Positions 1-47,878 of a stretch of 64,000 bases of DNA are shown here, in pieces. The notes under the pieces are model-generated. The model was not told where the DNA came from, made no database searches, and was given only the letters and a program-made list of their open reading frames with translations. Position 1 is the stretch's first letter; every line of letters starts with the position of its first letter. Both the position numbers and the translations under genes were made by a program. Source of the DNA: Euprymna scolopes (taxonomy: Eukaryota); assembly GCA_053919585.1 (NCBI GenBank), contig CM132824.1; one strand, 5' to 3'.

Positions 1-1
1 T

Positions 2-1261
2 TTTCGACAATTTTTTTATATTTGCTGAATATTTGGTCTCCTCAAGAATGTCGGTAATTGCATGTTGTATTTCATGCTCGTTAAGCTGTGAAATTTGTAA
101 AAAACGACCAATTTGGAAATGCGTGATTTTTCTTGCATTATCGAATTGTTCTGCTGAATTTGGGATGCAGAGAATTGGCACACCGTTGTACACACTCTCG
201 AATAACCCTTGCCGGCCACAATGGTAGATAAATAATTTGCTGCTTGGATGTGCCAAAGCATCGTTTTCAGAAAGTCCAGAATACATCAAAATGTTTTCGT
301 GCTGTTCTTCACTGTCGCATTTCCAAAATACTCGCCATTTTATATTTCGAAAAACAGACAGAAATAAAGAATGAATGAGAGAACCTGTTTTGAATTTTGA
401 TCCGAATGAGATTATGATAATACCATTATTGGCAGAGTCGAAGAATTCACTGATTGGAAATGATATAGGATCTGCTCTTTTTAACCGTAAGCATCCAACA
501 CGAATAAAATTGGGCATTACTGGCTCAGGAAAATCAAGAACCGTATCTGAACTCTCTATAAATAGGTCTGACATCTTTGGAAGATCTTCTTGGTCATTCC
601 AAGAGAGTTTGGGGGCAATATTGAATCCGTTGGACTGTGATATAGACCAATTAATCAAGAGCCGAGAGAAAAAATGGTATAGAAAATTACCAAGACGTTC
701 ATGAAATGGTATTTTCAGATGAAATGGTGAAAGGATATGCGGTAGAAAACTGTTTGTAATAGGATGACCAATTTCTAACCGGGAAATTTCACTTCCAAGA
801 CTGACAAATGGAATTGACAGATTGTAGGGAACAAGATAGAGACATTTGATAAAGAAAACGAATTCAACTATAGCCAAATCAAAACGCTCTTCTTGAAGTT
901 TCTTAAGTGAGCCTACATCTTTTTCAATGTGGGAGCAGATAATTTGACGAAGTTCACTCATTTTTTCGAGGGGTGTATCTTGTTTGTTTACCATGTTGAA
1001 AAAGGTGTTCATTTTGTCAACCATCTTATGTCCGTATCCGATGACGCGTGAAGTGTCTCCAAGCTGACTGGTATCGAAACCCCATGGTAAAAGAAAAACA
1101 ATTTCGTGACCACGTTTAACCAACTCTCTGCCGAGGGCGTCCATCTCTGTCACGTGGTTTTGAATAGCAATTGGCAATGCTAGGATCTTAATGCTTTCTG
1201 ATTCATCGATGCACACGTAACAAAGAAATGAGAGAAGACAAAGTAGCAGCCGATAATTCAT
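2..1261 (-). CDS. UDP-glycosyltransferase (UGT/GT1 family), 5' 420 codons; continues beyond the left window edge
   Basis: Manual translation from ATG 1261 gives 420 codons with no stop: signal peptide MNYRLLLCLLSFLCYVC, KILALPIAIQNHVTEMDALGRELVKRGHEI, FDLAIVE, PYNLSIPF, FHERLGN, IIISFGS, signature GLSENDALAHPSSKLFIYHCGRQGLFESVYNGVPILCIPNSAEQ, YSANIKKLSK. Colinear with the UGT at 23800. A polypyrimidine tract and acceptor (ttttacttcttacAG) lie 1 nt before the ATG. Confidence 0.95.
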   Translation of the reverse strand, partial: MNYRLLLCLLSFLCYVCIDESESIKILALPIAIQNHVTEMDALGRELVKRGHEIVFLLPWGFDTSQLGDTSRVIGYGHKMVDKMNTFFNMVNKQDTPLEKMSELRQIICSHIEKDVGSLKKLQEERFDLAIVEFVFFIKCLYLVPYNLSIPFVSLGSEISRLEIGHPITNSFLPHILSPFHLKIPFHERLGNFLYHFFSRLLINWSISQSNGFNIAPKLSWNDQEDLPKMSDLFIESSDTVLDFPEPVMPNFIRVGCLRLKRADPISFPISEFFDSANNGIIIISFGSKFKTGSLIHSLFLSVFRNIKWRVFWKCDSEEQHENILMYSGLSENDALAHPSSKLFIYHCGRQGLFESVYNGVPILCIPNSAEQFDNARKITHFQIGRFLQISQLNEHEIQHAITDILEETKYSANIKKLSK

Positions 1262-1262
1262 G

Positions 1263-1290
1263 CTGTAAGAAGTAAAATAAAAAAAAGACT
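1263..1290 (-). promoter_or_regulatory. Splice acceptor of a 5'-UTR intron of the left UGT
   Basis: Minus strand reads gtctttttttattttacttcttacAG|c ATG. Confidence 0.7.
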
Positions 1291-2057
1291 GACAGGTAAA
1301 ACATTTGTAAATTTAATTTACTGTTCAATTTGATAGGTGAAAATGTTAGATAAATGTGGTGAACGGCTTATCTCCCCTGCCTCCAGTATAATAATGGACT
1401 GCTCCTATTTATAAGCGATCTTATTTCCACTAACTTCTTTCATATATGCTGCATAAATATGTTAGGAATAAAACACGAAACAGAGAAGCAGTATTTTATT
1501 ATTGCTTAATATGTCCCTTAACTATTTCACACTAATCCCATCTCTATGCACATTTAACATGCATTTGTACTAATCTATTCTAAAAAAATGTCTAAGATTT
1601 AAGGCCTAAGCTTAAGGGGTCTTAATAATCTTGTTTAATTTATTTGTAATGACTAAGGAGCAAATTCATTGCAAATCTCAAATATTTGAATTTTTAAATG
1701 AGAGATTGTGCCCATAACATGCCATCCCATAAAAAAAATTAATTACTTAAAAGAAACTGAAAATTGTGGAACATTCGTTAGGCTTTATACCTATTGGATT
1801 CATCTGAATTTTTACAAAAGGTTTACACAGACTTTACATAAAACTAAATTAAACTGCATCTAATATTTTCATTAACTGTTTTTTCTTTTCGCAATAAACT
1901 TTTTTTATAAACATCAGCTTCCGAGTTGGTTTACCCACAGATCAGCACGAATCTGAATTATTAACGGTAAGAGAAGCATATAATCCACACGACAGAAATT
2001 AAAATGTGCTAATTTTGAAATAGACCAAGTGTGAAGCTTCTTCTTTAAAACTTACAC

Positions 2058-6863: not shown

Positions 6864-7074
6864 NNNNNNNNNNNNNNNNNNNNNNNNNNNNNNNNNNNNN
6901 NNNNNNNNNNNNNNNNNNNNNNNNNNNNNNNNNNNNNNNNNNNNNNNNNNNNNNNNNNNNNNNNNNNNNNNNNNNNNNNNNNNNNNNNNNNNNNNNNNNN
7001 NNNNNNNNNNNNNNNNNNNNNNNNNNNNNNNNNNNNNNNNNNNNNNNNNNNNNNNNNNNNNNNNNNNNNNNNNN
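6864..7074. other. Assembly gap (further gaps at 41219-41503, 42107-42261, 60047-60184, 63821-63960)
   Basis: N runs. Confidence 1.
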
Positions 7075-10975: not shown

Positions 10976-11958
10976 AAGTCTAAGGACATTATAAAACCAT
11001 AACATATTAAGGTATTTTAAATCTCTATTAAATTATTGGATGTAACTAACGTTCAAAATTTTCAGTATTCTCAAGGATTTTCTTAAATTTTATAACCAAT
11101 CAACTTAAATGCTTCCAAATTACTTTCAAATTTCGAAAGGTCAAAGAGTCCTTCATTTTTGTCAACTATTCAAAAAAGATTAAAATAGCTGACTTGTTTA
11201 TAAAGAAACTGAAAAGTATTCTGGTGGATTTAATTTTGTAAATATATATATAAATGTAATATTTGTATATATATCCGTTCCATCATACAAAAAAATTTTT
11301 CTGACAAATAAAAGAACTGGGAAACTAAATTTATTTCCATAATACGACGTGTTCTTTCTTTTTCCTTTCTTTCTTCTTTCGATACTAATTTATACGTTTT
11401 TTCTTTCCTATTGTTTTTACACTTTTCAGCTCTAGCCAACCCCTACCTCCTAACAAAAACAACAATAATGATAATATAAGAAAACATTTGAAAATTTTAC
11501 ATTAGAAAGGAAATGCAGCAAGCTCCTTCATCTGAAAATAATGCGGAAAAAAAAATTCAACTCGAAATAAAATAATAATGGTTTAAGACATGAATATTAA
11601 ATGCGAACACTAGCCAAGCATAATTTGAAGAAAAGGAACAATTGCCAATCGTATAGAGCGCCAATATCAAGGATTAGTAACAGGTCGTTACTCACTCGAG
11701 GAAGCTGGCTTTCGCCGCCACCCTAGCCTTGTGTCATACATGGCTAAAGTAGGATGCAAGTAAACAGCCAGGAAATACAAATAAATCAAAATAACATTCG
11801 AAACGTTGAAGTAAAAATTGAAAACAGAAAACTTGAAAACGACGTACCTTTAGCTGCGGATTCGACTTGTTGGTGAAAAAGAAAACAATCAACAAGAAAG
11901 AAAATTAGAACAGTGTAACATGATCAGTTTGTGTGTATCCATCTCACTGTCTGTAAGA

Positions 11959-12033
<75 letters not shown>

Positions 12034-12229
12034 CTGGTAGACGGGGAGATGGAAAAATAGTCCACGTTTTAATAACAAAAACCTGTATACTGAATAAATT
12101 AATCAGAGCGTGTCCCAAAAAAGAATTCAACATATTATCCTTTTTAAAGAGAATAATATGTTGAACTCTTTTTAAAGAGGATAATATGTTGAATTCTTTT
12201 TATTATGATTGAAACCGTGAAATAATCTT

Positions 12230-23799: not shown

Positions 23800-25317
23800 A
23801 TGTTTAGCTTTCCTTTTTGTATTTTCTTGGCAATTTGCAGTCTTTATTGCCAACAGCAAGTGCATGCGGCCAAAATCTTAGCCATCGCAATGCCACCTCA
23901 TAGTCATGTGGCCGAATCGAATGCAGTGGCTGTAGAATTGATGAAACGTGGTCACCAGGTCAAATTCTACTTGCCTGATGACCTGGATACCAGCAAATGT
24001 GCTCCAGACATCCCAAGTATAAGATATGGACAAAATACAATGTACCATGCAATAAAAATACTGGACAAGATCATGGAGTTAGCTTCGGAGGGAAGAAATT
24101 CACGTTTTCGTTTCATGCAAGCTGCAAGGAAGGCAGTTTGTACTCAATTGGTTAACGACACGACTGGCCTTAGTAAATTACGACAGGAAAACTTTGACTT
24201 TGCAATTGTTGATTATCTTTATTTTATAAAATGCTACTTGCTAATTCCATATAATTTATCGATTCCTTTTGCTGGTATCAGTTCAGTCATTATGCCATTG
24301 GACGATGGTCAGCCAATATCTACATCAGTGAGTCCGTCTGTCATGACACTATATACACCTAACATGGCTTACCATGAACGTGTGATCAACACTGTAACTC
24401 ACATTATGACCAATATTGCCACGTATTATTTCTTAGAGGCTTATGATTATTCTAAAATTGCACCAGGACTCAGCTGGAGAGAACTACAGGAACTTTCAAA
24501 AAAAGCTGAGATATATCTGGAAAATTCTGACGTAGTTCTTGGCTATCCTAAACTATTAATGCAAAATCTAATCCAAGTTGGTGGACTTACAGTAAAACCT
24601 CCAAAACCTTTACCAAAAAATATTCAGAAATTCTTTGACGAAGCAAAACATGGAGTCATCATCGTGTCATTTGGATCAACATTTAAGTTCAACGATAATT
24701 TGAAAAATATTTTTATGTCTGTATTTCAAAAACTGAAACAGAAAATTTTCTGGAAAGCTGACGAAGAAAAAGAAATAGGAAATGTTTTAATGACAAAATG
24801 GTTACCCCAAAACGATGCATTGGCCCACCCAAACACAAAACTCATAATTTATCATTGTGGTAATAATGGAATGTTCGAGAGTCTCTACCACGGCGTACCT
24901 TTAATTTGTGTCCCACAAGAAGTTGACCAGTTCACGAATTCACGTAAATTGGAATATTTAAAAATTGGTCGATTTTTCGACATTGCAGATCTGACCGAAG
25001 AATTACTACAAGAATGCATACTTGATGTCCTTGGTGACCCTAAATACACATCAAATATCAAACACTTATCAGAAATCTATCAAAGTCGACCAGAAACAGC
25101 AGCTGAACGAGCTGCATCGGCCATTGAACACGTGATCAAATATGGCGGAAAACATCTTCGCCTTGATCAAGTCGATTTGTCAACTTTTCAATTGTTGGCT
25201 GTTGACGTTTGGTTTACTATTTTTGTATTACTGATTGTTTTTATGAAAATTATTATTTTTATTTTTGTTTTTTGCAAACGTTTTGTGCAGTCGAAAATAA
25301 AAATTAAGCAAAATTAA
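23800..25317 (+). CDS. UDP-glycosyltransferase (UGT/GT1 family), 505 aa, single coding exon
   Basis: Signal peptide MFSFPFCIFLAICSL, catalytic His (PPHSH) and Asp (FDFAIVD), signature WLPQNDALAHPNTKLIIYHCGNNGMFESLYHGVPLICVPQEVDQ (24799-24930), C-terminal TM helix and KxKxx ER-retrieval tail (KIKQN). Acceptor tttctttttcAG at 23785-86; AATAAA at 25335 and 25355. Confidence 0.97.
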   Translation: MFSFPFCIFLAICSLYCQQQVHAAKILAIAMPPHSHVAESNAVAVELMKRGHQVKFYLPDDLDTSKCAPDIPSIRYGQNTMYHAIKILDKIMELASEGRNSRFRFMQAARKAVCTQLVNDTTGLSKLRQENFDFAIVDYLYFIKCYLLIPYNLSIPFAGISSVIMPLDDGQPISTSVSPSVMTLYTPNMAYHERVINTVTHIMTNIATYYFLEAYDYSKIAPGLSWRELQELSKKAEIYLENSDVVLGYPKLLMQNLIQVGGLTVKPPKPLPKNIQKFFDEAKHGVIIVSFGSTFKFNDNLKNIFMSVFQKLKQKIFWKADEEKEIGNVLMTKWLPQNDALAHPNTKLIIYHCGNNGMFESLYHGVPLICVPQEVDQFTNSRKLEYLKIGRFFDIADLTEELLQECILDVLGDPKYTSNIKHLSEIYQSRPETAAERAASAIEHVIKYGGKHLRLDQVDLSTFQLLAVDVWFTIFVLLIVFMKIIIFIFVFCKRFVQSKIKIKQN

Positions 25318-44048: not shown

Positions 44049-47000
44049 TTTTTTTTTTTTTTTTTTTATTACATTTTCACCCCAAACAAGGCACATTGCC
44101 ACTTTGGTGTAGGGGGCTACTATCAGGGGAAACATCTACTGGGGTACTATGTAGGGATTAGGGCAGCGAGATGTTGGTTCACATTGCACTTGAACTTATG
44201 CATGTCAGTACAGTTGGGGAAGCAGTGACCTGGAATGGAATTCCAAAGTCTAGCAGTTCTGGGGAAGAAACTACTGGAGTAGAAAGATCTTTTACATCTA
44301 AGGATCTCTACAGTGTGGAGGTGGGATTTTGCAGCTTGTCGGGTCTGTCGAGGGTGTTCACGTCGTGGGGGCACAAGTGCTTGCAGTTCTTCAGAGCATT
44401 CACCATTATAATACTTGTAGAACAGGCAGAGGGATGCAACGTTTCGACGATGGGACAGGGGCTGAAGTTTAGATGCCAGTTTAGGGCCTATCAGATTTGC
44501 GACTCTCTTTTGAACCCTGTCAAGGAGCGAGAGACTAGTAGCCGATGCACCGGCCCAAATATGACAGCAATACTCCATACATGGGCGAATAGTGGCCTTA
44601 TAGAGGTACAGGATACTTTCGGGTGTTAAAAGTTTTCTAGCACGGTAGAGAGAGCCCACCTTCCTTGCAGCGGCCCTGGCAATGCCCTCGATGTAATTGT
44701 TCCAACTCATGTTTCCTGTGAACGTTAGGCCAAGGAGCTTGAATGACGTACTCTCAGATAAAGAGTCGTTGGCCATTGCTATAGGTGGTAGAGAAGGTTT
44801 CTTGTAATTATTGAATGAAACCAGTTTTGTCTTGGTGGCATTGAACGTTACCATCCATTTTTGTCCCCATTCCACTACTGATTGGAGGTCATCCTCTAGT
44901 GTATCTGCCATAACTTTAGATATATGTTCGTTTGTTTTCCTGTCGTGCCTGCTATAGAGTGTGGTGTCATCAGCATATATACCCATCTCAGAGGCAATCT
45001 TGTCGGGGAGGTCATTTATAAATATCAGGAACAGCAGAGGTCCAAGGATAGATCCTTGGGGCACTCCCGCATTTATATCATATTGTTTAGATGTACGACC
45101 GTCGAGGACAACCTGGATTTTTCTCTTATCTAAGAAGGATTTAATTATGTTAAGTATTCTACCAATGATACCGTAAGATCTAATCTTCCTGAGGAGACCC
45201 TCATGCCATACCCTGTCAAAAGCCTTAGATATATCTAGAGCTACCGCTCTGCCCTCTCCTGCTTTGTCCAGTGAATGGTATATGCGTTCAGAGATTACAG
45301 TTAGGATGTCTGCCGTGGAACGGGCTTGTCTAAATCCATATTGATGGTCGGTCAGAAGTTTAGCATCTGTAAGGTGCTGGACTAGAGCATGGTTAATTAA
45401 GGTCTCAAATATTTTGGCAAAAAGTGGGAGGAGGCTAATAGGTCGATAATTTAATGGGTCAGTTCTTTCGCCAGAATTCTTGAATACTGGTACTACAGAA
45501 GCAGTTTTCCAACAGCTCGGAAAGCAAGATTCATTAAGGCATTTGTTGTAGAGTTTGGAGAGAACTGGAGCTACTTCGGCTGAGCACTTTTTTAATAGCA
45601 CAGCTGGGATGAGGTCGGGTCCACATGCTTTGGAAGTGTCAAGGTTCTTTATGATAGCATGCACCTGAGCAGGGGTGATTTTCAGATCGTCTAGCGTGGC
45701 GTCTGTCCGCATAGGAAATTGAGGTAGGGGGTGGTTTAGAGGGTCCAGTGTGGAGTTTGAGGCAAACCGACTGGCAAGCATGTTAGCCTTCTCGGTTGCT
45801 GAGCAAAGAACCTCGTGATTGTTGTTTAGTGGGGGAATTGTTGATTGCCCATTATTTACTACACTGTTGTAGATTTTCCAGAAGTCACGAGTTCCTAGTT
45901 TTTGTGCTTCGATGCGTTTTTTAGTGGTTTCCGTAAATTCCCTCTTAGCTGTCGCTATTTCTTTCTTAACGTTACTTCTAGCTTCTATGTACTTCTGTCT
46001 GTTTGAACTGGACTTATGTCGATTAAACCTGCGGAATGCATGCTGCCTTTGAGCAATGGCAGTTGCGCAAGTCGAAGTAAACCATTGGGGAGAGTGGGGC
46101 TTGCTATAGAATTTCCGCATGGGAACATGCGCTTCGATTGCAGTTTTGAACCATTCAGTGGTCTCGGTTGCACACTGTTCAGCAGGAAGAGAAAAAATAT
46201 TTCCCCATGGGGCGTCTCTGATAAGATCTCTGATAGCTTCCCAGTCAGCCTTTTTATAATATCTCGTTGTTTTGAGCACTGGCTCTTCAGTTTTGGGTCT
46301 AGAGTTTAGGGCGATTTCAACCATTATCACCGCATGATCAGCGTTCCCAAGTGGGCTGTCGGCTTTCGTTACACAATCATCGGGAACTGTGGTCAAAAAC
46401 AGATCTAATAGTGATGCGTGTTGTTCTTCCTGATCAGGGAAGCGGGTTGGAAAAGTAACAATTTGCGATAGGGAGTGAGATACAGAGAAGCTATGAGTTG
46501 CGCTGCCTGCTGCATCTGTGTAAGTAGAGAATCCAAGCCAGTTTTTGTGATGGACATTAAAGTCGCCAAATACATGTACTTGGGCGCTAGTGTCGAAGGA
46601 GAGTGCTGTGTCTATGCTGTCAGATACTTTGTTTATTATGGTGCAGTCTTGGGTCGAGGGAGAGCGGTAGAGAAAGTAAAAGTAGCTAATGTTGTGTTGC
46701 ATGATTAGTCTAAAGCACATAAAGGCTTGATCATCCGTTTCTAGGTTTGTTTCTCTAGTCAAGGGAAGGGTATTACAGATGTAAACTCCAAGTCCGTGCA
46801 TATGTCTGTCAGAGTCCTTACGGCAGAGTGGGAGATATCCAGGCATGTTAAAGTAGTTAGAGGGGATGGAGGAGTGTAGGTTAGTCTCACTTAGTGCTAA
46901 GATATCCGGGGTATTTGTTAGGAGAAATGCTTCAACATCAGCTAAATTAGTTCTAAGCCCACGGATATTTGTGAATGCAAGCCTCAAGGGAGGAGGCAAG

Positions 47001-47878
47001 TTGGATTTGTTTGACCCTAAGCCTGGATTAAGCTTATTTTTAGATTGTACTGTCATCATGTTTTTTTAACGAGTTTCAGTTGGGTTAGGGGAAGCCGAAC
47101 AGGAGGTTATGTAGAATATCACACATGCATCACAAGTAGACCATCAGCTGACCCTCCATCAACTAGGACTGTGGCCTCAGGAAAGCCAACCGGGGATGAG
47201 TGCAGGGTCCCTTTCCATGCGCGCCATGGCACTGCAAACATCCCGATATTATTCAACTGCTGATGGAGCAGCCGCTCTAAGCGCTACCAAAGAGTTAGGG
47301 CCCTGTACTACCAGTCGGAAACAGCAGCCAGTAACTGTCAATCCGGTACCCTCAACCCATCGGAGGAAGGTCAACCCAATCTAATTGCTCAGGCATATGT
47401 GGTACTCAAGCATTCTCAAGTGCCCAGCTTTAGGGGTGGGGTGTGTCGGGAGTGGGGAAACGGCGTTCATTGCCCTAGACAAGAAACAAGATCTACCACT
47501 GGGTGTTTCTGTCGAATCACTGTGATAGTATCTCTGCGCCTGACTAATAGGCAAAGAAGGAGTATGGAAGCCGGGCGATAGGCAGGACCTATCTACTCCT
47601 TAAGCATTTTAGGTTTGCAAACTTGTAATTTGATTGAGTCACCAGCTCTAGGAAGGTTGTCATCCAAGACTGAAGAGGCCTCCCTCCTCTTTGGTTTGGT
47701 TTCAGAGTTTTCCTTCTCCTAGACGGATGATCTGGAAAGATCTACTGGGTCTGTCACCACTGAGAGGGTTTCCTCCGCGCATGGGTTCTAATCCAGGTAT
47801 TTCTGCGACCCCGCGTGGTTAGTTAATGTTATTGGGTTAGTTTGTAGAGGTTATATCTGCTAAAATAGTTACACTCCT
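44049..47878 (-). mobile_element. Apparently full-length single-ORF CR1-group (Zenon-like) LINE
   Basis: Poly(A) tail (T run 44049-44067) fused to AATAAA, 79 bp 3' UTR, intact ORF, about 820 nt leader; both flanks are the same minisatellite. Confidence 0.93.
44147..47059 (-). CDS. APE endonuclease - reverse transcriptase, 970 aa
   Basis: NIRGL, LSET, YRSP, GDFN, LDLFL, ADH (APE); YRPISLL, QYGFR, LDISKAFDRV, GVPQGSILGP, YADD, LLG (RT); uninterrupted frame. Confidence 0.98.
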   Translation of the reverse strand: MMTVQSKNKLNPGLGSNKSNLPPPLRLAFTNIRGLRTNLADVEAFLLTNTPDILALSETNLHSSIPSNYFNMPGYLPLCRKDSDRHMHGLGVYICNTLPLTRETNLETDDQAFMCFRLIMQHNISYFYFLYRSPSTQDCTIINKVSDSIDTALSFDTSAQVHVFGDFNVHHKNWLGFSTYTDAAGSATHSFSVSHSLSQIVTFPTRFPDQEEQHASLLDLFLTTVPDDCVTKADSPLGNADHAVIMVEIALNSRPKTEEPVLKTTRYYKKADWEAIRDLIRDAPWGNIFSLPAEQCATETTEWFKTAIEAHVPMRKFYSKPHSPQWFTSTCATAIAQRQHAFRRFNRHKSSSNRQKYIEARSNVKKEIATAKREFTETTKKRIEAQKLGTRDFWKIYNSVVNNGQSTIPPLNNNHEVLCSATEKANMLASRFASNSTLDPLNHPLPQFPMRTDATLDDLKITPAQVHAIIKNLDTSKACGPDLIPAVLLKKCSAEVAPVLSKLYNKCLNESCFPSCWKTASVVPVFKNSGERTDPLNYRPISLLPLFAKIFETLINHALVQHLTDAKLLTDHQYGFRQARSTADILTVISERIYHSLDKAGEGRAVALDISKAFDRVWHEGLLRKIRSYGIIGRILNIIKSFLDKRKIQVVLDGRTSKQYDINAGVPQGSILGPLLFLIFINDLPDKIASEMGIYADDTTLYSRHDRKTNEHISKVMADTLEDDLQSVVEWGQKWMVTFNATKTKLVSFNNYKKPSLPPIAMANDSLSESTSFKLLGLTFTGNMSWNNYIEGIARAAARKVGSLYRARKLLTPESILYLYKATIRPCMEYCCHIWAGASATSLSLLDRVQKRVANLIGPKLASKLQPLSHRRNVASLCLFYKYYNGECSEELQALVPPRREHPRQTRQAAKSHLHTVEILRCKRSFYSSSFFPRTARLWNSIPGHCFPNCTDMHKFKCNVNQHLAALIPT

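What the first reader, a model, noticed from the sequence alone, without database searches (positions are those of the whole stretch)
2..1261. Hidden UGT with an intact frame but a rewired nucleotide-sugar pocket
Seen: 420 open codons absent from the ORF track. Relative to the paralog at 23800, WLPQ becomes GLSE, HCGNNG becomes HCGRQG, DQ becomes EQ, the dyad Asp (AIVD) becomes Glu (AIVE), VGG becomes VGC and SH becomes NH, while the catalytic His is kept. Established: in the GT1 signature (PSPG/UGT motif) the first aromatic residue stacks on uracil, the Gln lies near the nucleoside, and the HxGxN/S segment binds the diphosphate. Inference: an open frame at high divergence suggests selection, so clustered changes at donor contacts point to a different donor nucleotide or sugar, or to a non-catalytic ligand-binding or regulatory pseudoenzyme.
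Basis: partly seen in the sequence, partly recalled or inferred. Interest (0 to 1): 0.7.

Follow-up and report, generated by a model that had tools for sequence, protein, structure and literature searches.

The report
Conserved UGT lacking the uracil-stacking tryptophan
The open frame is a real, spliced and expressed UDP-glycosyltransferase-family gene, one of a small group kept intact in three related (probably squid or cuttlefish) lineages, that has lost the tryptophan every other sampled animal UGT uses to hold the uridine of its sugar donor; what it now does is untested.

Summary
The frame looked "hidden" only because it runs off the window edge.

Transcript contigs complete the protein at 501 aa, with a transmembrane helix and a KLKIH tail. 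They also show a canonical GT-AG 5'UTR intron of 10.6 kb, from exon 1 at 11848 to the acceptor at 1263.

Two other lineages carry intact orthologs at 64-65% identity. All keep G/E-L-S-E in place of W-L-P-Q. Trp is invariant in 119 of 119 other homologs sampled here.

Only W>G/E, P>S, Q>E, VGG>VGC/Y and SH>NH define the clade. AIVD>AIVE, DQ>EQ and N>R fall within normal family variation, and N>Q is specific to this species.

The catalytic His, the dyad acid, and PSPG positions His19, Glu27 and D/E43-Gln44 are all retained. The orthologs diverge no faster than their canonical neighbours.

This copy shows signs of relaxed constraint:
- More unique changes than its orthologs (75 against 47).
- pN/pS about 0.7, from only 11 variants.
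- One transcript contig with a frameshift.

Most likely it is a still-catalytic ER UGT with a remodelled uridine subsite. A pseudoenzyme is the main rival. It is a new variant of a known kind, of moderate interest.

The parts
1..1262 (-). Exon 2 as far as the window reaches. It holds one 5'UTR base (1262) plus codons 1-420 of the 501-codon CDS (ATG at 1261-1259). The last 81 codons, the stop and a 355-nt 3'UTR lie to the left of the window.
   Evidence: Translation. The full-length transcript contig L001 is identical over 1-1264. P0001 is 501 aa. AATAAA lies about 20 nt before the contig end.
1263..11847 (-). 5'UTR intron of 10,585 bp with canonical GT (11847-11846) and AG (1264-1263) ends. 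It contains an N run at 6864-7074, which was left unread.
   Evidence: RNA-run contigs X8 and X3 stop at 1264 and continue with letters that match 11848-11876 (table 7). The donor reads gtacgt. The acceptor reads ttacag|cATG. DNA run X5 is collinear through 1500.
11848..11876 (-). Non-coding exon 1 (5'UTR), minimum extent; the transcription start site is not determined. A (TA)n tract lies just upstream, at about 11965-12035.
   Evidence: There is an exact 19-mer match, with 0 matches expected by chance. The loose end of the X3 contig extends to 11876. Sequence.
146..277 (-). Equivalent of the 44-residue UGT/PSPG donor-binding signature (residues 329-372). Position 1 is Gly (canonical Trp), 3 is Ser (Pro), 4 is Glu (Gln) and 23 is Gln (Asn). 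Kept are 19 His, 24 Gly, 27 Glu, 43 Glu (D/E is allowed) and 44 Gln.
   Evidence: Gap-free alignment to the UGT2B17 and UGT2B15 C-domains. Motif table. Census of 119 homologs. Residue roles from review PMC10641439.
1154..1159 (-). Asn35-His36. The catalytic His is kept. The preceding Ser, present in 100 of 106 aligned homologs, is Asn throughout the clade.
863..865 (-). Glu133 at the dyad-acid position. It is Asp in the two orthologs, and Glu in 24 of 119 other homologs.
491..493 (-). Cys257, in VGC replacing VGG. It is Gly in 107 of 119 other homologs and C/C/C/Y within the clade. It sits at the boundary between the N and C domains.
478..482 (-). A5 run (T5 on the plus strand) in codons 260-262. 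One transcript contig (L002) has A4 here, which breaks the frame into 283-aa and 176-aa pieces.
   Evidence: This rests on a single Logan contig and was not verified with raw reads.
23800..25317 (+). Canonical paralog: a single-exon ORF with WLPQ, HCGNNG, DQ, SH, AIVD and VGG, in divergent orientation about 22.5 kb away.

Best explanation
The frame is the main coding exon of a genuine, polyadenylated, spliced gene for a type-I ER membrane protein of the animal UGT (GT1, GT-B fold) family. The protein has a signal peptide, a lumenal two-domain body, a transmembrane helix and a KxKxx tail. It belongs to a narrow subfamily, here called xLSE, found in three related lineages. By the closest named hits and an earlier scan note, these are probably decapodiform cephalopods. 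The subfamily arose by tandem duplication next to a canonical UGT. It went through a burst of change on its stem and has since evolved at the same pace as its canonical neighbour. The burst removed the uracil-stacking Trp and altered the neighbouring Pro and Gln (W-L-P-Q to G/E-L-S-E). It left intact the catalytic His/acid dyad and the residues that hold the diphosphate, ribose and sugar. My inferred mechanism, not shown here, is that the protein is still a glycosyltransferase whose uridine subsite is remodelled. It would either bind UDP-sugars differently or more weakly, or have a shifted nucleotide preference. In the species of this window the gene additionally shows mild relaxation of constraint.
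For: Shown. The ORF is intact and completed to 501 aa with a TM helix and KLKIH tail. RNA contigs from at least two studies, including polyA RNA-seq, join exon 1 (11848) to 1262 across a GT-AG intron, while a DNA run is collinear. Nineteen runs in nine studies hold the sequence, most at the exon-only share of 0.88-0.90. PF00201 scores 189 bits. The AF2 model has pLDDT 87.6 and pTM 0.83, and its Foldseek top hits are GT1 structures such as TuUGT202A2, YojK and OleI, at E about 1e-20. Orthologs P0002/P0010 and P0003 (64-65% identity) keep xLSE. P0003 lies on the same 220-kb contig as the ortholog of the canonical paralog. In the tree the xLSE clade has 100/100 support, a stem of 0.55 against 0.24-0.26 for the sister subfamilies, and similar terminal branches. 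Ortholog identity is 67/64/71% against 67/64/67% for the canonical subfamily, and the signature region is the best-conserved part at 77-89%. His36, the dyad D/E, His347, Glu355 and D/E371-Gln372 are invariant in the clade. Amino-acid polymorphism is similar to that of the sister UGT genes. Inferred: retention of the catalytic residues implies retained catalysis.
Against: Review PMC10641439 reports that mutating PSPG positions 1, 4, 19, 24 or 27 abolishes activity in plant UGTs. Within the clade the donor-contact positions 1 (G/E), 23 (Q/N/K) and 43 (E/D/E) vary, whereas they are invariant in the canonical subfamily. That is not what a newly fixed donor specificity would predict. This copy has 75 unique substitutions against 47 and 54 in its orthologs (p=0.011 and 0.064), concentrated in the C-domain at 29 against 15. 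There are 8 nonsynonymous and 3 synonymous polymorphisms, giving pN/pS 0.71, which excludes values of 0.2 or lower at p=0.045. One transcript contig carries a frameshift. No codon-level dN/dS between species could be computed, because DNA for the orthologs was not available.
Confidence: 0.5

Rival explanations
1. The protein is a non-catalytic UGT-like protein (pseudoenzyme). The fold, ER targeting and acceptor-side cleft are kept for binding a small ligand, or for modulating neighbouring active UGTs through hetero-oligomers. Nucleotide-sugar binding has been lost.
For: The Trp that is invariant in 119 of 119 other homologs is lost, together with Pro3 and Gln4. Mutations at these positions inactivate plant UGTs. 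The contact positions 1, 23 and 43 vary within the clade. The N-domain is more conserved than in the canonical subfamily (67/65/71 against 58/56/61%), and the C-domain less so (68/67/75 against 78/75/74%). The gene is tandemly linked to canonical UGTs.
Against: The catalytic His36, the dyad acid, His19, Glu27 and D/E43-Gln44 are all retained across the clade. The sister subfamily B shows that these residues can be lost in this family. The signature region remains the most conserved segment at 77-89%.
Confidence: 0.3
2. In this species the gene is sliding towards a pseudogene. The subfamily may function elsewhere, but the window's copy is under relaxed constraint and survives only as a transcribed open frame.
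For: The relative-rate excess is 75 against 47 unique changes (p=0.011), and the canonical neighbour shows none (59 against 47, not significant). Extra private changes sit at functional positions: dyad D>E and Asn23>Gln. pN/pS is 0.71, with nonsynonymous diversity close to 3'UTR diversity. There is an A5>A4 frameshift in contig L002.
Against: The ORF is intact in the reference, in a second DNA run and in 4 of 5 transcript contigs. Only 11 variants were counted. All amino-acid variants are conservative. Amino-acid diversity is similar in the sister UGT genes of the same and the second species. The frameshift rests on one assembled contig in a homopolymer.
Confidence: 0.15
3. The gene is a processed retrocopy, or the open frame arose by chance and has no function.
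For: The coding sequence has no introns.
Against: The canonical paralog and the orthologs are also single-coding-exon genes. This gene has its own spliced 5'UTR exon 10.6 kb upstream. Its position next to the canonical UGT is conserved in another species. The frame has stayed open in three lineages at about 35% divergence.
Confidence: 0.02

Closest known systems
Canonical animal ER UDP-glycosyltransferases (PF00201), e.g. human UGT2B7, 2B15 and 2B17 (C-domain structures 2O6L, 6IPB, 7YAN)
   Same: Both have a signal peptide, a GT-B lumenal body, a TM helix and a dilysine tail. The donor signature aligns without gaps. The catalytic His and acid, and signature positions His19, Gly24, Glu27 and D/E43-Gln44, are shared.
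   Different: Position 1 is Gly or Glu instead of Trp, position 3 is Ser instead of Pro, and position 4 is Glu instead of Gln. In addition VGG>VGC/Y and SH>NH. None of 119 sampled homologs lacks the Trp.
The neighbouring canonical paralog (window 23800-25317) and its orthologs P0013 and P0014
   Same: They share the gene cluster, the single-coding-exon structure, the length, and the rate of ortholog divergence.
   Different: The paralog keeps WLPQ, HCGNNG, DQ, SH and VGG. It is only 39% identical.
Tetranychus urticae UGT202A2 (6PNT, 8SFY with UDP-glucose), the best full-length solved structural match
   Same: A GT1 GT-B fold over about 450 aligned columns, with TM-score 0.64-0.74.
   Different: Sequence identity is 18-20%. 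UGT202A2 is a soluble enzyme. Its uridine contacts were not compared residue by residue here.
Enzymatically inactive UGT isoforms that modulate active UGTs (human alternative-splice variants; alternative isoforms are studied in PMC9609030)
   Same: They serve as a model for the pseudoenzyme rival: a UGT-fold protein that affects glucuronidation without catalysing it.
   Different: Those are splice products of active genes that lack the C-terminal parts. This is a separate, full-length, conserved gene. The mode of action of the human isoforms is from my own recollection and was not checked here.

Membership tests
Animal UGT superfamily (CAZy GT1; Pfam PF00201 UDPGT) | A significant match to the family profile | tested here: met
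   PF00201 scores 189 bits (E 2e-55) against a cutoff of 19.5. This is lower than the 218-260 bits of the canonical paralogs.
Animal UGT superfamily (CAZy GT1; Pfam PF00201 UDPGT) | A GT-B fold with two Rossmann-like domains | tested here: met
   The AF2 model has pLDDT 87.6 and pTM 0.83, with alternating strand and helix elements. All top Foldseek hits are GT1 glycosyltransferases at E about 1e-20.
Animal UGT superfamily (CAZy GT1; Pfam PF00201 UDPGT) | Type-I ER topology: N-terminal signal peptide, C-terminal TM helix and a cytosolic dilysine (KxKxx) tail | tested here: met
   P0001 has a hydrophobic N-terminus (residues 1-22), a helix at 463-500 in the model and the C-terminus ...KNKLKIH. 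No dedicated signal-peptide predictor was available.
Animal UGT superfamily (CAZy GT1; Pfam PF00201 UDPGT) | A catalytic His with its partner Asp (the dyad) | tested here: met
   His36 is kept in all clade members. The dyad position is Glu133 here and Asp in the orthologs, and Glu occurs in 24 of 119 other homologs.
Animal UGT superfamily (CAZy GT1; Pfam PF00201 UDPGT) | Signature position 1, the Trp that stacks on uracil | tested here: not met
   It is Gly329 here and G/G/E in the orthologs, against Trp in 119 of 119 other homologs. The residue's role is taken from PMC10641439.
Animal UGT superfamily (CAZy GT1; Pfam PF00201 UDPGT) | Signature position 4 Gln and position 27 Glu, which contact the ribose hydroxyls | tested here: inconclusive
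   Position 4 is Glu throughout the clade, against Gln in 113 and Leu in 6 of 119 others. Position 27 Glu is kept. A Glu could still hydrogen-bond to the ribose.
Animal UGT superfamily (CAZy GT1; Pfam PF00201 UDPGT) | Signature positions 19 His and 23/24 Asn-Gly(Ser), which contact the diphosphate | tested here: inconclusive
   His347 and Gly352 are kept. Position 23 is Gln here, Asn in P0002/P0010 and Lys in P0003.
Animal UGT superfamily (CAZy GT1; Pfam PF00201 UDPGT) | Signature positions 43/44 (D/E-Q), which contact the sugar | tested here: met
   The residues are Glu371-Gln372. E at position 43 occurs in 23 of 119 others, and the review names Asp or Glu as typical.
Animal UGT superfamily (CAZy GT1; Pfam PF00201 UDPGT) | UDP-sugar-dependent glycosyl transfer | not testable with these tools
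   This needs a recombinant enzyme assay.
Pseudoenzyme (catalytically dead paralog) | Loss of catalytic or cofactor-binding residues together with conservation of the fold and purifying selection | tested here: inconclusive
   One key donor contact (Trp1) and its neighbours are lost, but the catalytic His and acid and most donor contacts are kept. The fold and ortholog conservation are shown.
Pseudogene | A disrupted frame, no expression, or neutral evolution | tested here: not met
   The frame is intact, the mRNA is spliced and from polyA libraries, and the orthologs are intact. As caveats, pN/pS is 0.71 on 11 variants and one contig is frameshifted.

The most novel reading that the evidence does not exclude
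A lineage-restricted animal UGT subfamily has abandoned uridine recognition. Either it has moved to a non-UDP nucleotide-sugar or some other activated donor, or it has become a ligand-binding or regulatory pseudoenzyme. It has nonetheless been kept under selection next to its canonical parent in three lineages.
Probability: 0.35. Interest if true: 0.6.

Novelty: new variant of a known kind. Interest (0 to 1): 0.4.

Why it matters
The first Trp of the UGT/PSPG signature is treated as a near-universal uridine contact in GT1 enzymes. A conserved, expressed subfamily without it is therefore a natural experiment. It tests whether the contact is dispensable, replaceable, or a switch to another donor or to a non-catalytic role. 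It also gives a concrete target, with a canonical tandem paralog as a built-in control, in a UGT family reported as expanded in cuttlefish with expression in skin and retina (PMC13218726). No function was tested here, so the practical value for now is a correct gene model and a clear biochemical question.

Tried and rejected
- Between-species dN/dS. I used protein-level relative rates and within-species polymorphism instead.
- More clade members. A profile of five clade sequences searched against the 5.8-billion collection returned only the same three clusters. This is a word-seeded search, so more distant members could have been missed.
- The large representative search (search of protein representatives) was not run. 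The family was not in question, the operators flagged its cost, and 119 homologs already gave a motif census.
- The alternative 5' exon seen in L005/X12 was looked for in the window and not found in the readable letters. The N run inside the intron was left alone.
- Literature. I searched for W356 mutants of human UGT2B7 and for UGT pseudoenzymes. I found only a plant-UGT review with the residue roles and no report of a Trp-less animal UGT. Subscription papers are not covered.
- Tyr327 as a substitute stacking residue. It is invariant in the clade, two residues before the lost Trp. I considered it and do not rely on it, because human UGT2B enzymes have Tyr at the same position together with Trp, and model coordinates could not be measured.
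- The PROSITE UGT pattern recalled from memory was not used as a test, because the canonical paralog would itself appear to fail it.

Full report
**1. The observation**

The minus strand of window 2-1261 translates into 420 codons without a stop, starting at an ATG at 1261-1259. The frame is missing from the ORF list only because that tool omits ORFs that run off an end of the source. Pfam assigns it to PF00201 UDPGT, at 152 bits for the window part and 189 bits for the full protein, against a cutoff of 19.5.

It is 39% identical (E 2e-117) to the single-exon UGT at 23800-25317 on the plus strand. These two are the only UGT loci in the window.

**2. The gene is complete, spliced and expressed**

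The word search found an identical 501-aa protein, P0001, encoded on a 1,881-nt contig of a public run (L001). That contig continues the frame for 81 codons to the left of the window. It runs through a hydrophobic helix to a ...KNKLKIH end (KxKxx). A 355-nt 3'UTR follows, with AATAAA about 20 nt before the contig end.

The first 19 nt of L001 do not match the genome upstream of the ATG. They match window 11848-11866 on the minus strand exactly, with 0 matches expected by chance. That match is followed by gtacgt. The genome next to the ATG reads ttacag|cATG. Together these define a canonical GT-AG intron of 10,585 bp in the 5'UTR.

I laid contigs of four runs on window 1-1500:
- Two polyA RNA-seq runs and a third run from another study stop at 1264.
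- Two of these (X8, X3) continue into the exon-1 letters.
- A DNA run (X5) is collinear through 1500.
- X12 and L005 carry a different 5' exon that adds 13 residues before the signal peptide. It is not in the readable letters of the window.

Nineteen runs in nine studies hold the stretch. Most hold a share of 0.88-0.90, which equals the exon-only fraction of the query. Contig depths are not a measure of expression level, so I make no claim about level or tissue.

**3. Relatives**

Only two further clusters are close:
- P0002, P0010, P0011 and P0012, at 65% identity, from Logan RNA contigs of several runs.
- P0003, at 64% identity, on a 220,201-bp ENA contig.

A profile of the clade found nothing more. 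All members keep the non-canonical motif, as YSGLSEND, YPGLSEND or YSELSEND.

Searching with the canonical paralog found its orthologs P0013 (66%) and P0014 (63%). P0014 is on the same ENA contig as P0003. That contig also holds a second canonical copy and a UGT broken into three pieces. The tandem arrangement is therefore conserved.

The ML tree (IQ-TREE, PMSF) shows a well-supported ten-member clade made of three subfamilies, each with three lineages:

| Subfamily | Members | Stem length |
|---|---|---|
| A, canonical | paralog, P0013, P0014 | 0.24 |
| B | P0015, P0016, P0017 | 0.26 |
| C, xLSE | P0001, P0003, P0002/P0010 (100/100 support) | 0.55 |

Terminal branches are alike: P0001 is 0.31 and its canonical neighbour 0.28.

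The closest named proteins are molluscan at no more than 38% identity (chiton, gastropods, Octopus, Argonauta). An earlier scan note on another piece of this genome calls it a cephalopod. That note is an unverified lead, though it is consistent with these hits. I therefore read the three lineages as related cephalopods, probably decapodiforms, because the Octopus and Argonauta proteins fall outside the clade. This is inference.

**4. Which changes matter**

| Position | Other homologs | xLSE clade |
|---|---|---|
| Signature position 1 | Trp in 119 of 119 | G/G/G/E |
| Signature position 3 | Pro in 117 of 119 | Ser |
| Signature position 4 | Gln in 113, Leu in 6, never Glu | Glu |
| Second Gly of VGG | Gly in 107 of 119 | C/C/C/Y |
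| Ser before the catalytic His | Ser in 100 of 106 | Asn |

A scan for positions at least 85% conserved elsewhere but different in all clade members gave only six: 35, 235, 237, 257, 329 and 331.

The other listed changes are not clade-defining:
- The dyad position is Glu in 24 of 119 others. It is Asp in both orthologs.
- Position 43 is Glu in 23 of 119 others.
- The Arg in HCGR corresponds to a common Lys.
- Asn23>Gln is private to this species; the orthologs have Asn or Lys.

Kept throughout the clade are His36, the dyad acid, SFGS, His347 (position 19), Gly352 (24), Glu355 (27) and Gln372 (44).

A review of plant UGT structures gives the residue roles (PMC10641439). Trp1 stacks on uracil. 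Gln4 and Glu27 bind the ribose hydroxyls. His19 and residue 24 bind the phosphates. Positions 43 and 44 bind the sugar. Mutations at positions 1, 4, 19, 24 and 27 abolish activity.

The remodelling is therefore confined to the uridine end of the donor site, plus two positions near the cleft. It is not the whole pocket.

**5. Constraint**

*Between lineages.* The xLSE orthologs are 67/64/71% identical over the mature protein, against 67/64/67% for the canonical subfamily. The signature segment is the best-conserved part, at 77-89%. Three lineages at about 35% divergence all keep a roughly 500-codon frame. A truly decayed UGT in the same cluster of one species is in pieces. This argues for long-term purifying selection after a fast stem.

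*Within the clade.* The N-domain is relatively more conserved and the C-domain relatively less conserved than in the canonical subfamily. Contact positions 1, 23 and 43 vary.

*This species' copy.*
- Tajima relative-rate counts are 75 unique changes against 47 for P0002 (p=0.011) and 54 for P0003 (p=0.064). The excess is concentrated in the C-domain (29 against 15). The canonical neighbour shows none (59 against 47, not significant).
- Five transcript contigs and one DNA run give 8 nonsynonymous and 3 synonymous variable codons. That is pN/pS 0.71, which excludes 0.2 or lower at p=0.045 but not 0.3-1.
- All amino-acid variants are conservative.
- Three SNPs in about 340 nt of 3'UTR give a similar diversity.
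- One contig (L002) has A4 instead of A5 at window 478-482. This splits the frame at codons 260-262. It is a single assembled contig, and my one read-laying run was already spent, so it is unverified.

*Control.* Amino-acid diversity per site is similar in sister UGT genes. In the species I take to be this one (P0015's run is assigned to it only tentatively), it is 0.0093 against 0.0065 for subfamily B. In the second species it is 0.025 against 0.020 and 0.023. High protein polymorphism may be a property of the family.

**6. Fold**

AlphaFold2 with the 30-sequence alignment gives pLDDT 87.6 and pTM 0.83. The model has the strand-helix alternation of two Rossmann-like domains and a terminal helix at 463-500. 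Confidence in the signature region is 88-94.

Foldseek's best PDB matches are all GT1 enzymes: YojK, TuUGT202A2, OleI and UGT51, at E about 1e-20. By sequence, the best solved relatives are the C-domains of human UGT2B17 and UGT2B15 (E 2e-21), aligned without gaps through the signature. Model coordinates could not be inspected, so I make no statement about what fills the Trp site.

**7. Reading**

*Shown.* This is a real, expressed, full-length member of the UGT family. It belongs to a small conserved subfamily that lacks the otherwise invariant Trp.

*Inferred.* The catalytic dyad and the phosphate, ribose and sugar contacts are retained. The sister subfamily B shows that such residues can be lost in this family. 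On that basis I favour a still-active transferase with a remodelled uridine subsite (0.5). The rivals are a non-catalytic UGT-like protein (0.3) and ongoing decay of this species' copy (0.15).

A switch to a non-UDP donor is possible. I rate it below altered UDP binding, because ER-lumenal UGTs normally meet UDP-sugars (my own knowledge, not tested here) and because the replaced positions are not fixed to one new residue.

**8. Comparison and novelty**

The protein is a member of PF00201/GT1 by profile, fold, topology and catalytic residues. It fails one defining donor-contact feature, Trp1, and is ambiguous at two more.

I found no report of a Trp-less animal UGT in the searchable literature. 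UGT expansion in cuttlefish is reported at family level only (PMC13218726).

I class it as a new variant of a known kind, of moderate interest.

Noticed in passing
Not in the window: P0015 (L006:187-1701), P0016, P0017: Sister subfamily B has lost both the catalytic His (SH>SV/ST) and the dyad Asp (>N/T) in all three lineages. It keeps WLPQ, HCGNNG and DQ, high PF00201 scores (248-260 bits) and intact transcripts. It is a stronger pseudoenzyme or alternative-mechanism candidate than the gene under study. Several gastropod homologs (P0021, P0022, P0028, P0033) also lack the His.
   Followed up: partly
window 478-482 (L002:781-785): One transcript contig of the gene has a 1-bp deletion in an A5 run, which breaks the frame after the N-domain. 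It may be a segregating null allele or an assembly error.
   Followed up: partly
L005:1-93: An alternative first exon is spliced to the same acceptor and adds MDQKENYSQLAFS in frame ahead of the signal peptide. It is absent from the readable letters of the window. An N run at 6864-7074 lies inside the 5'UTR intron and was left unread.
   Followed up: partly
window 23800-25317: The canonical paralog has no entry at 90% identity or more in the protein collection. The Trp-less gene, in contrast, was assembled from many RNA runs. The canonical copy may be weakly expressed or restricted to particular tissues.
   Followed up: no
window 11965-12035: A long (TA)n microsatellite lies about 100 nt upstream of the known part of exon 1, in the presumed promoter region.
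   Followed up: no
window 44147-47059 (-): A 970-aa ORF with endonuclease and reverse-transcriptase domains (PF03372/PF14529 and PF00078), i.e. a LINE element.
   Followed up: partly
ENA contig of P0003 and P0014 (no DNA served): In the third species the UGT cluster holds two tandem canonical 505-aa genes 8.6 kb apart and a UGT broken into three ORF pieces (252, 125 and 127 aa). This shows what a decayed copy looks like in this family.
   Followed up: no
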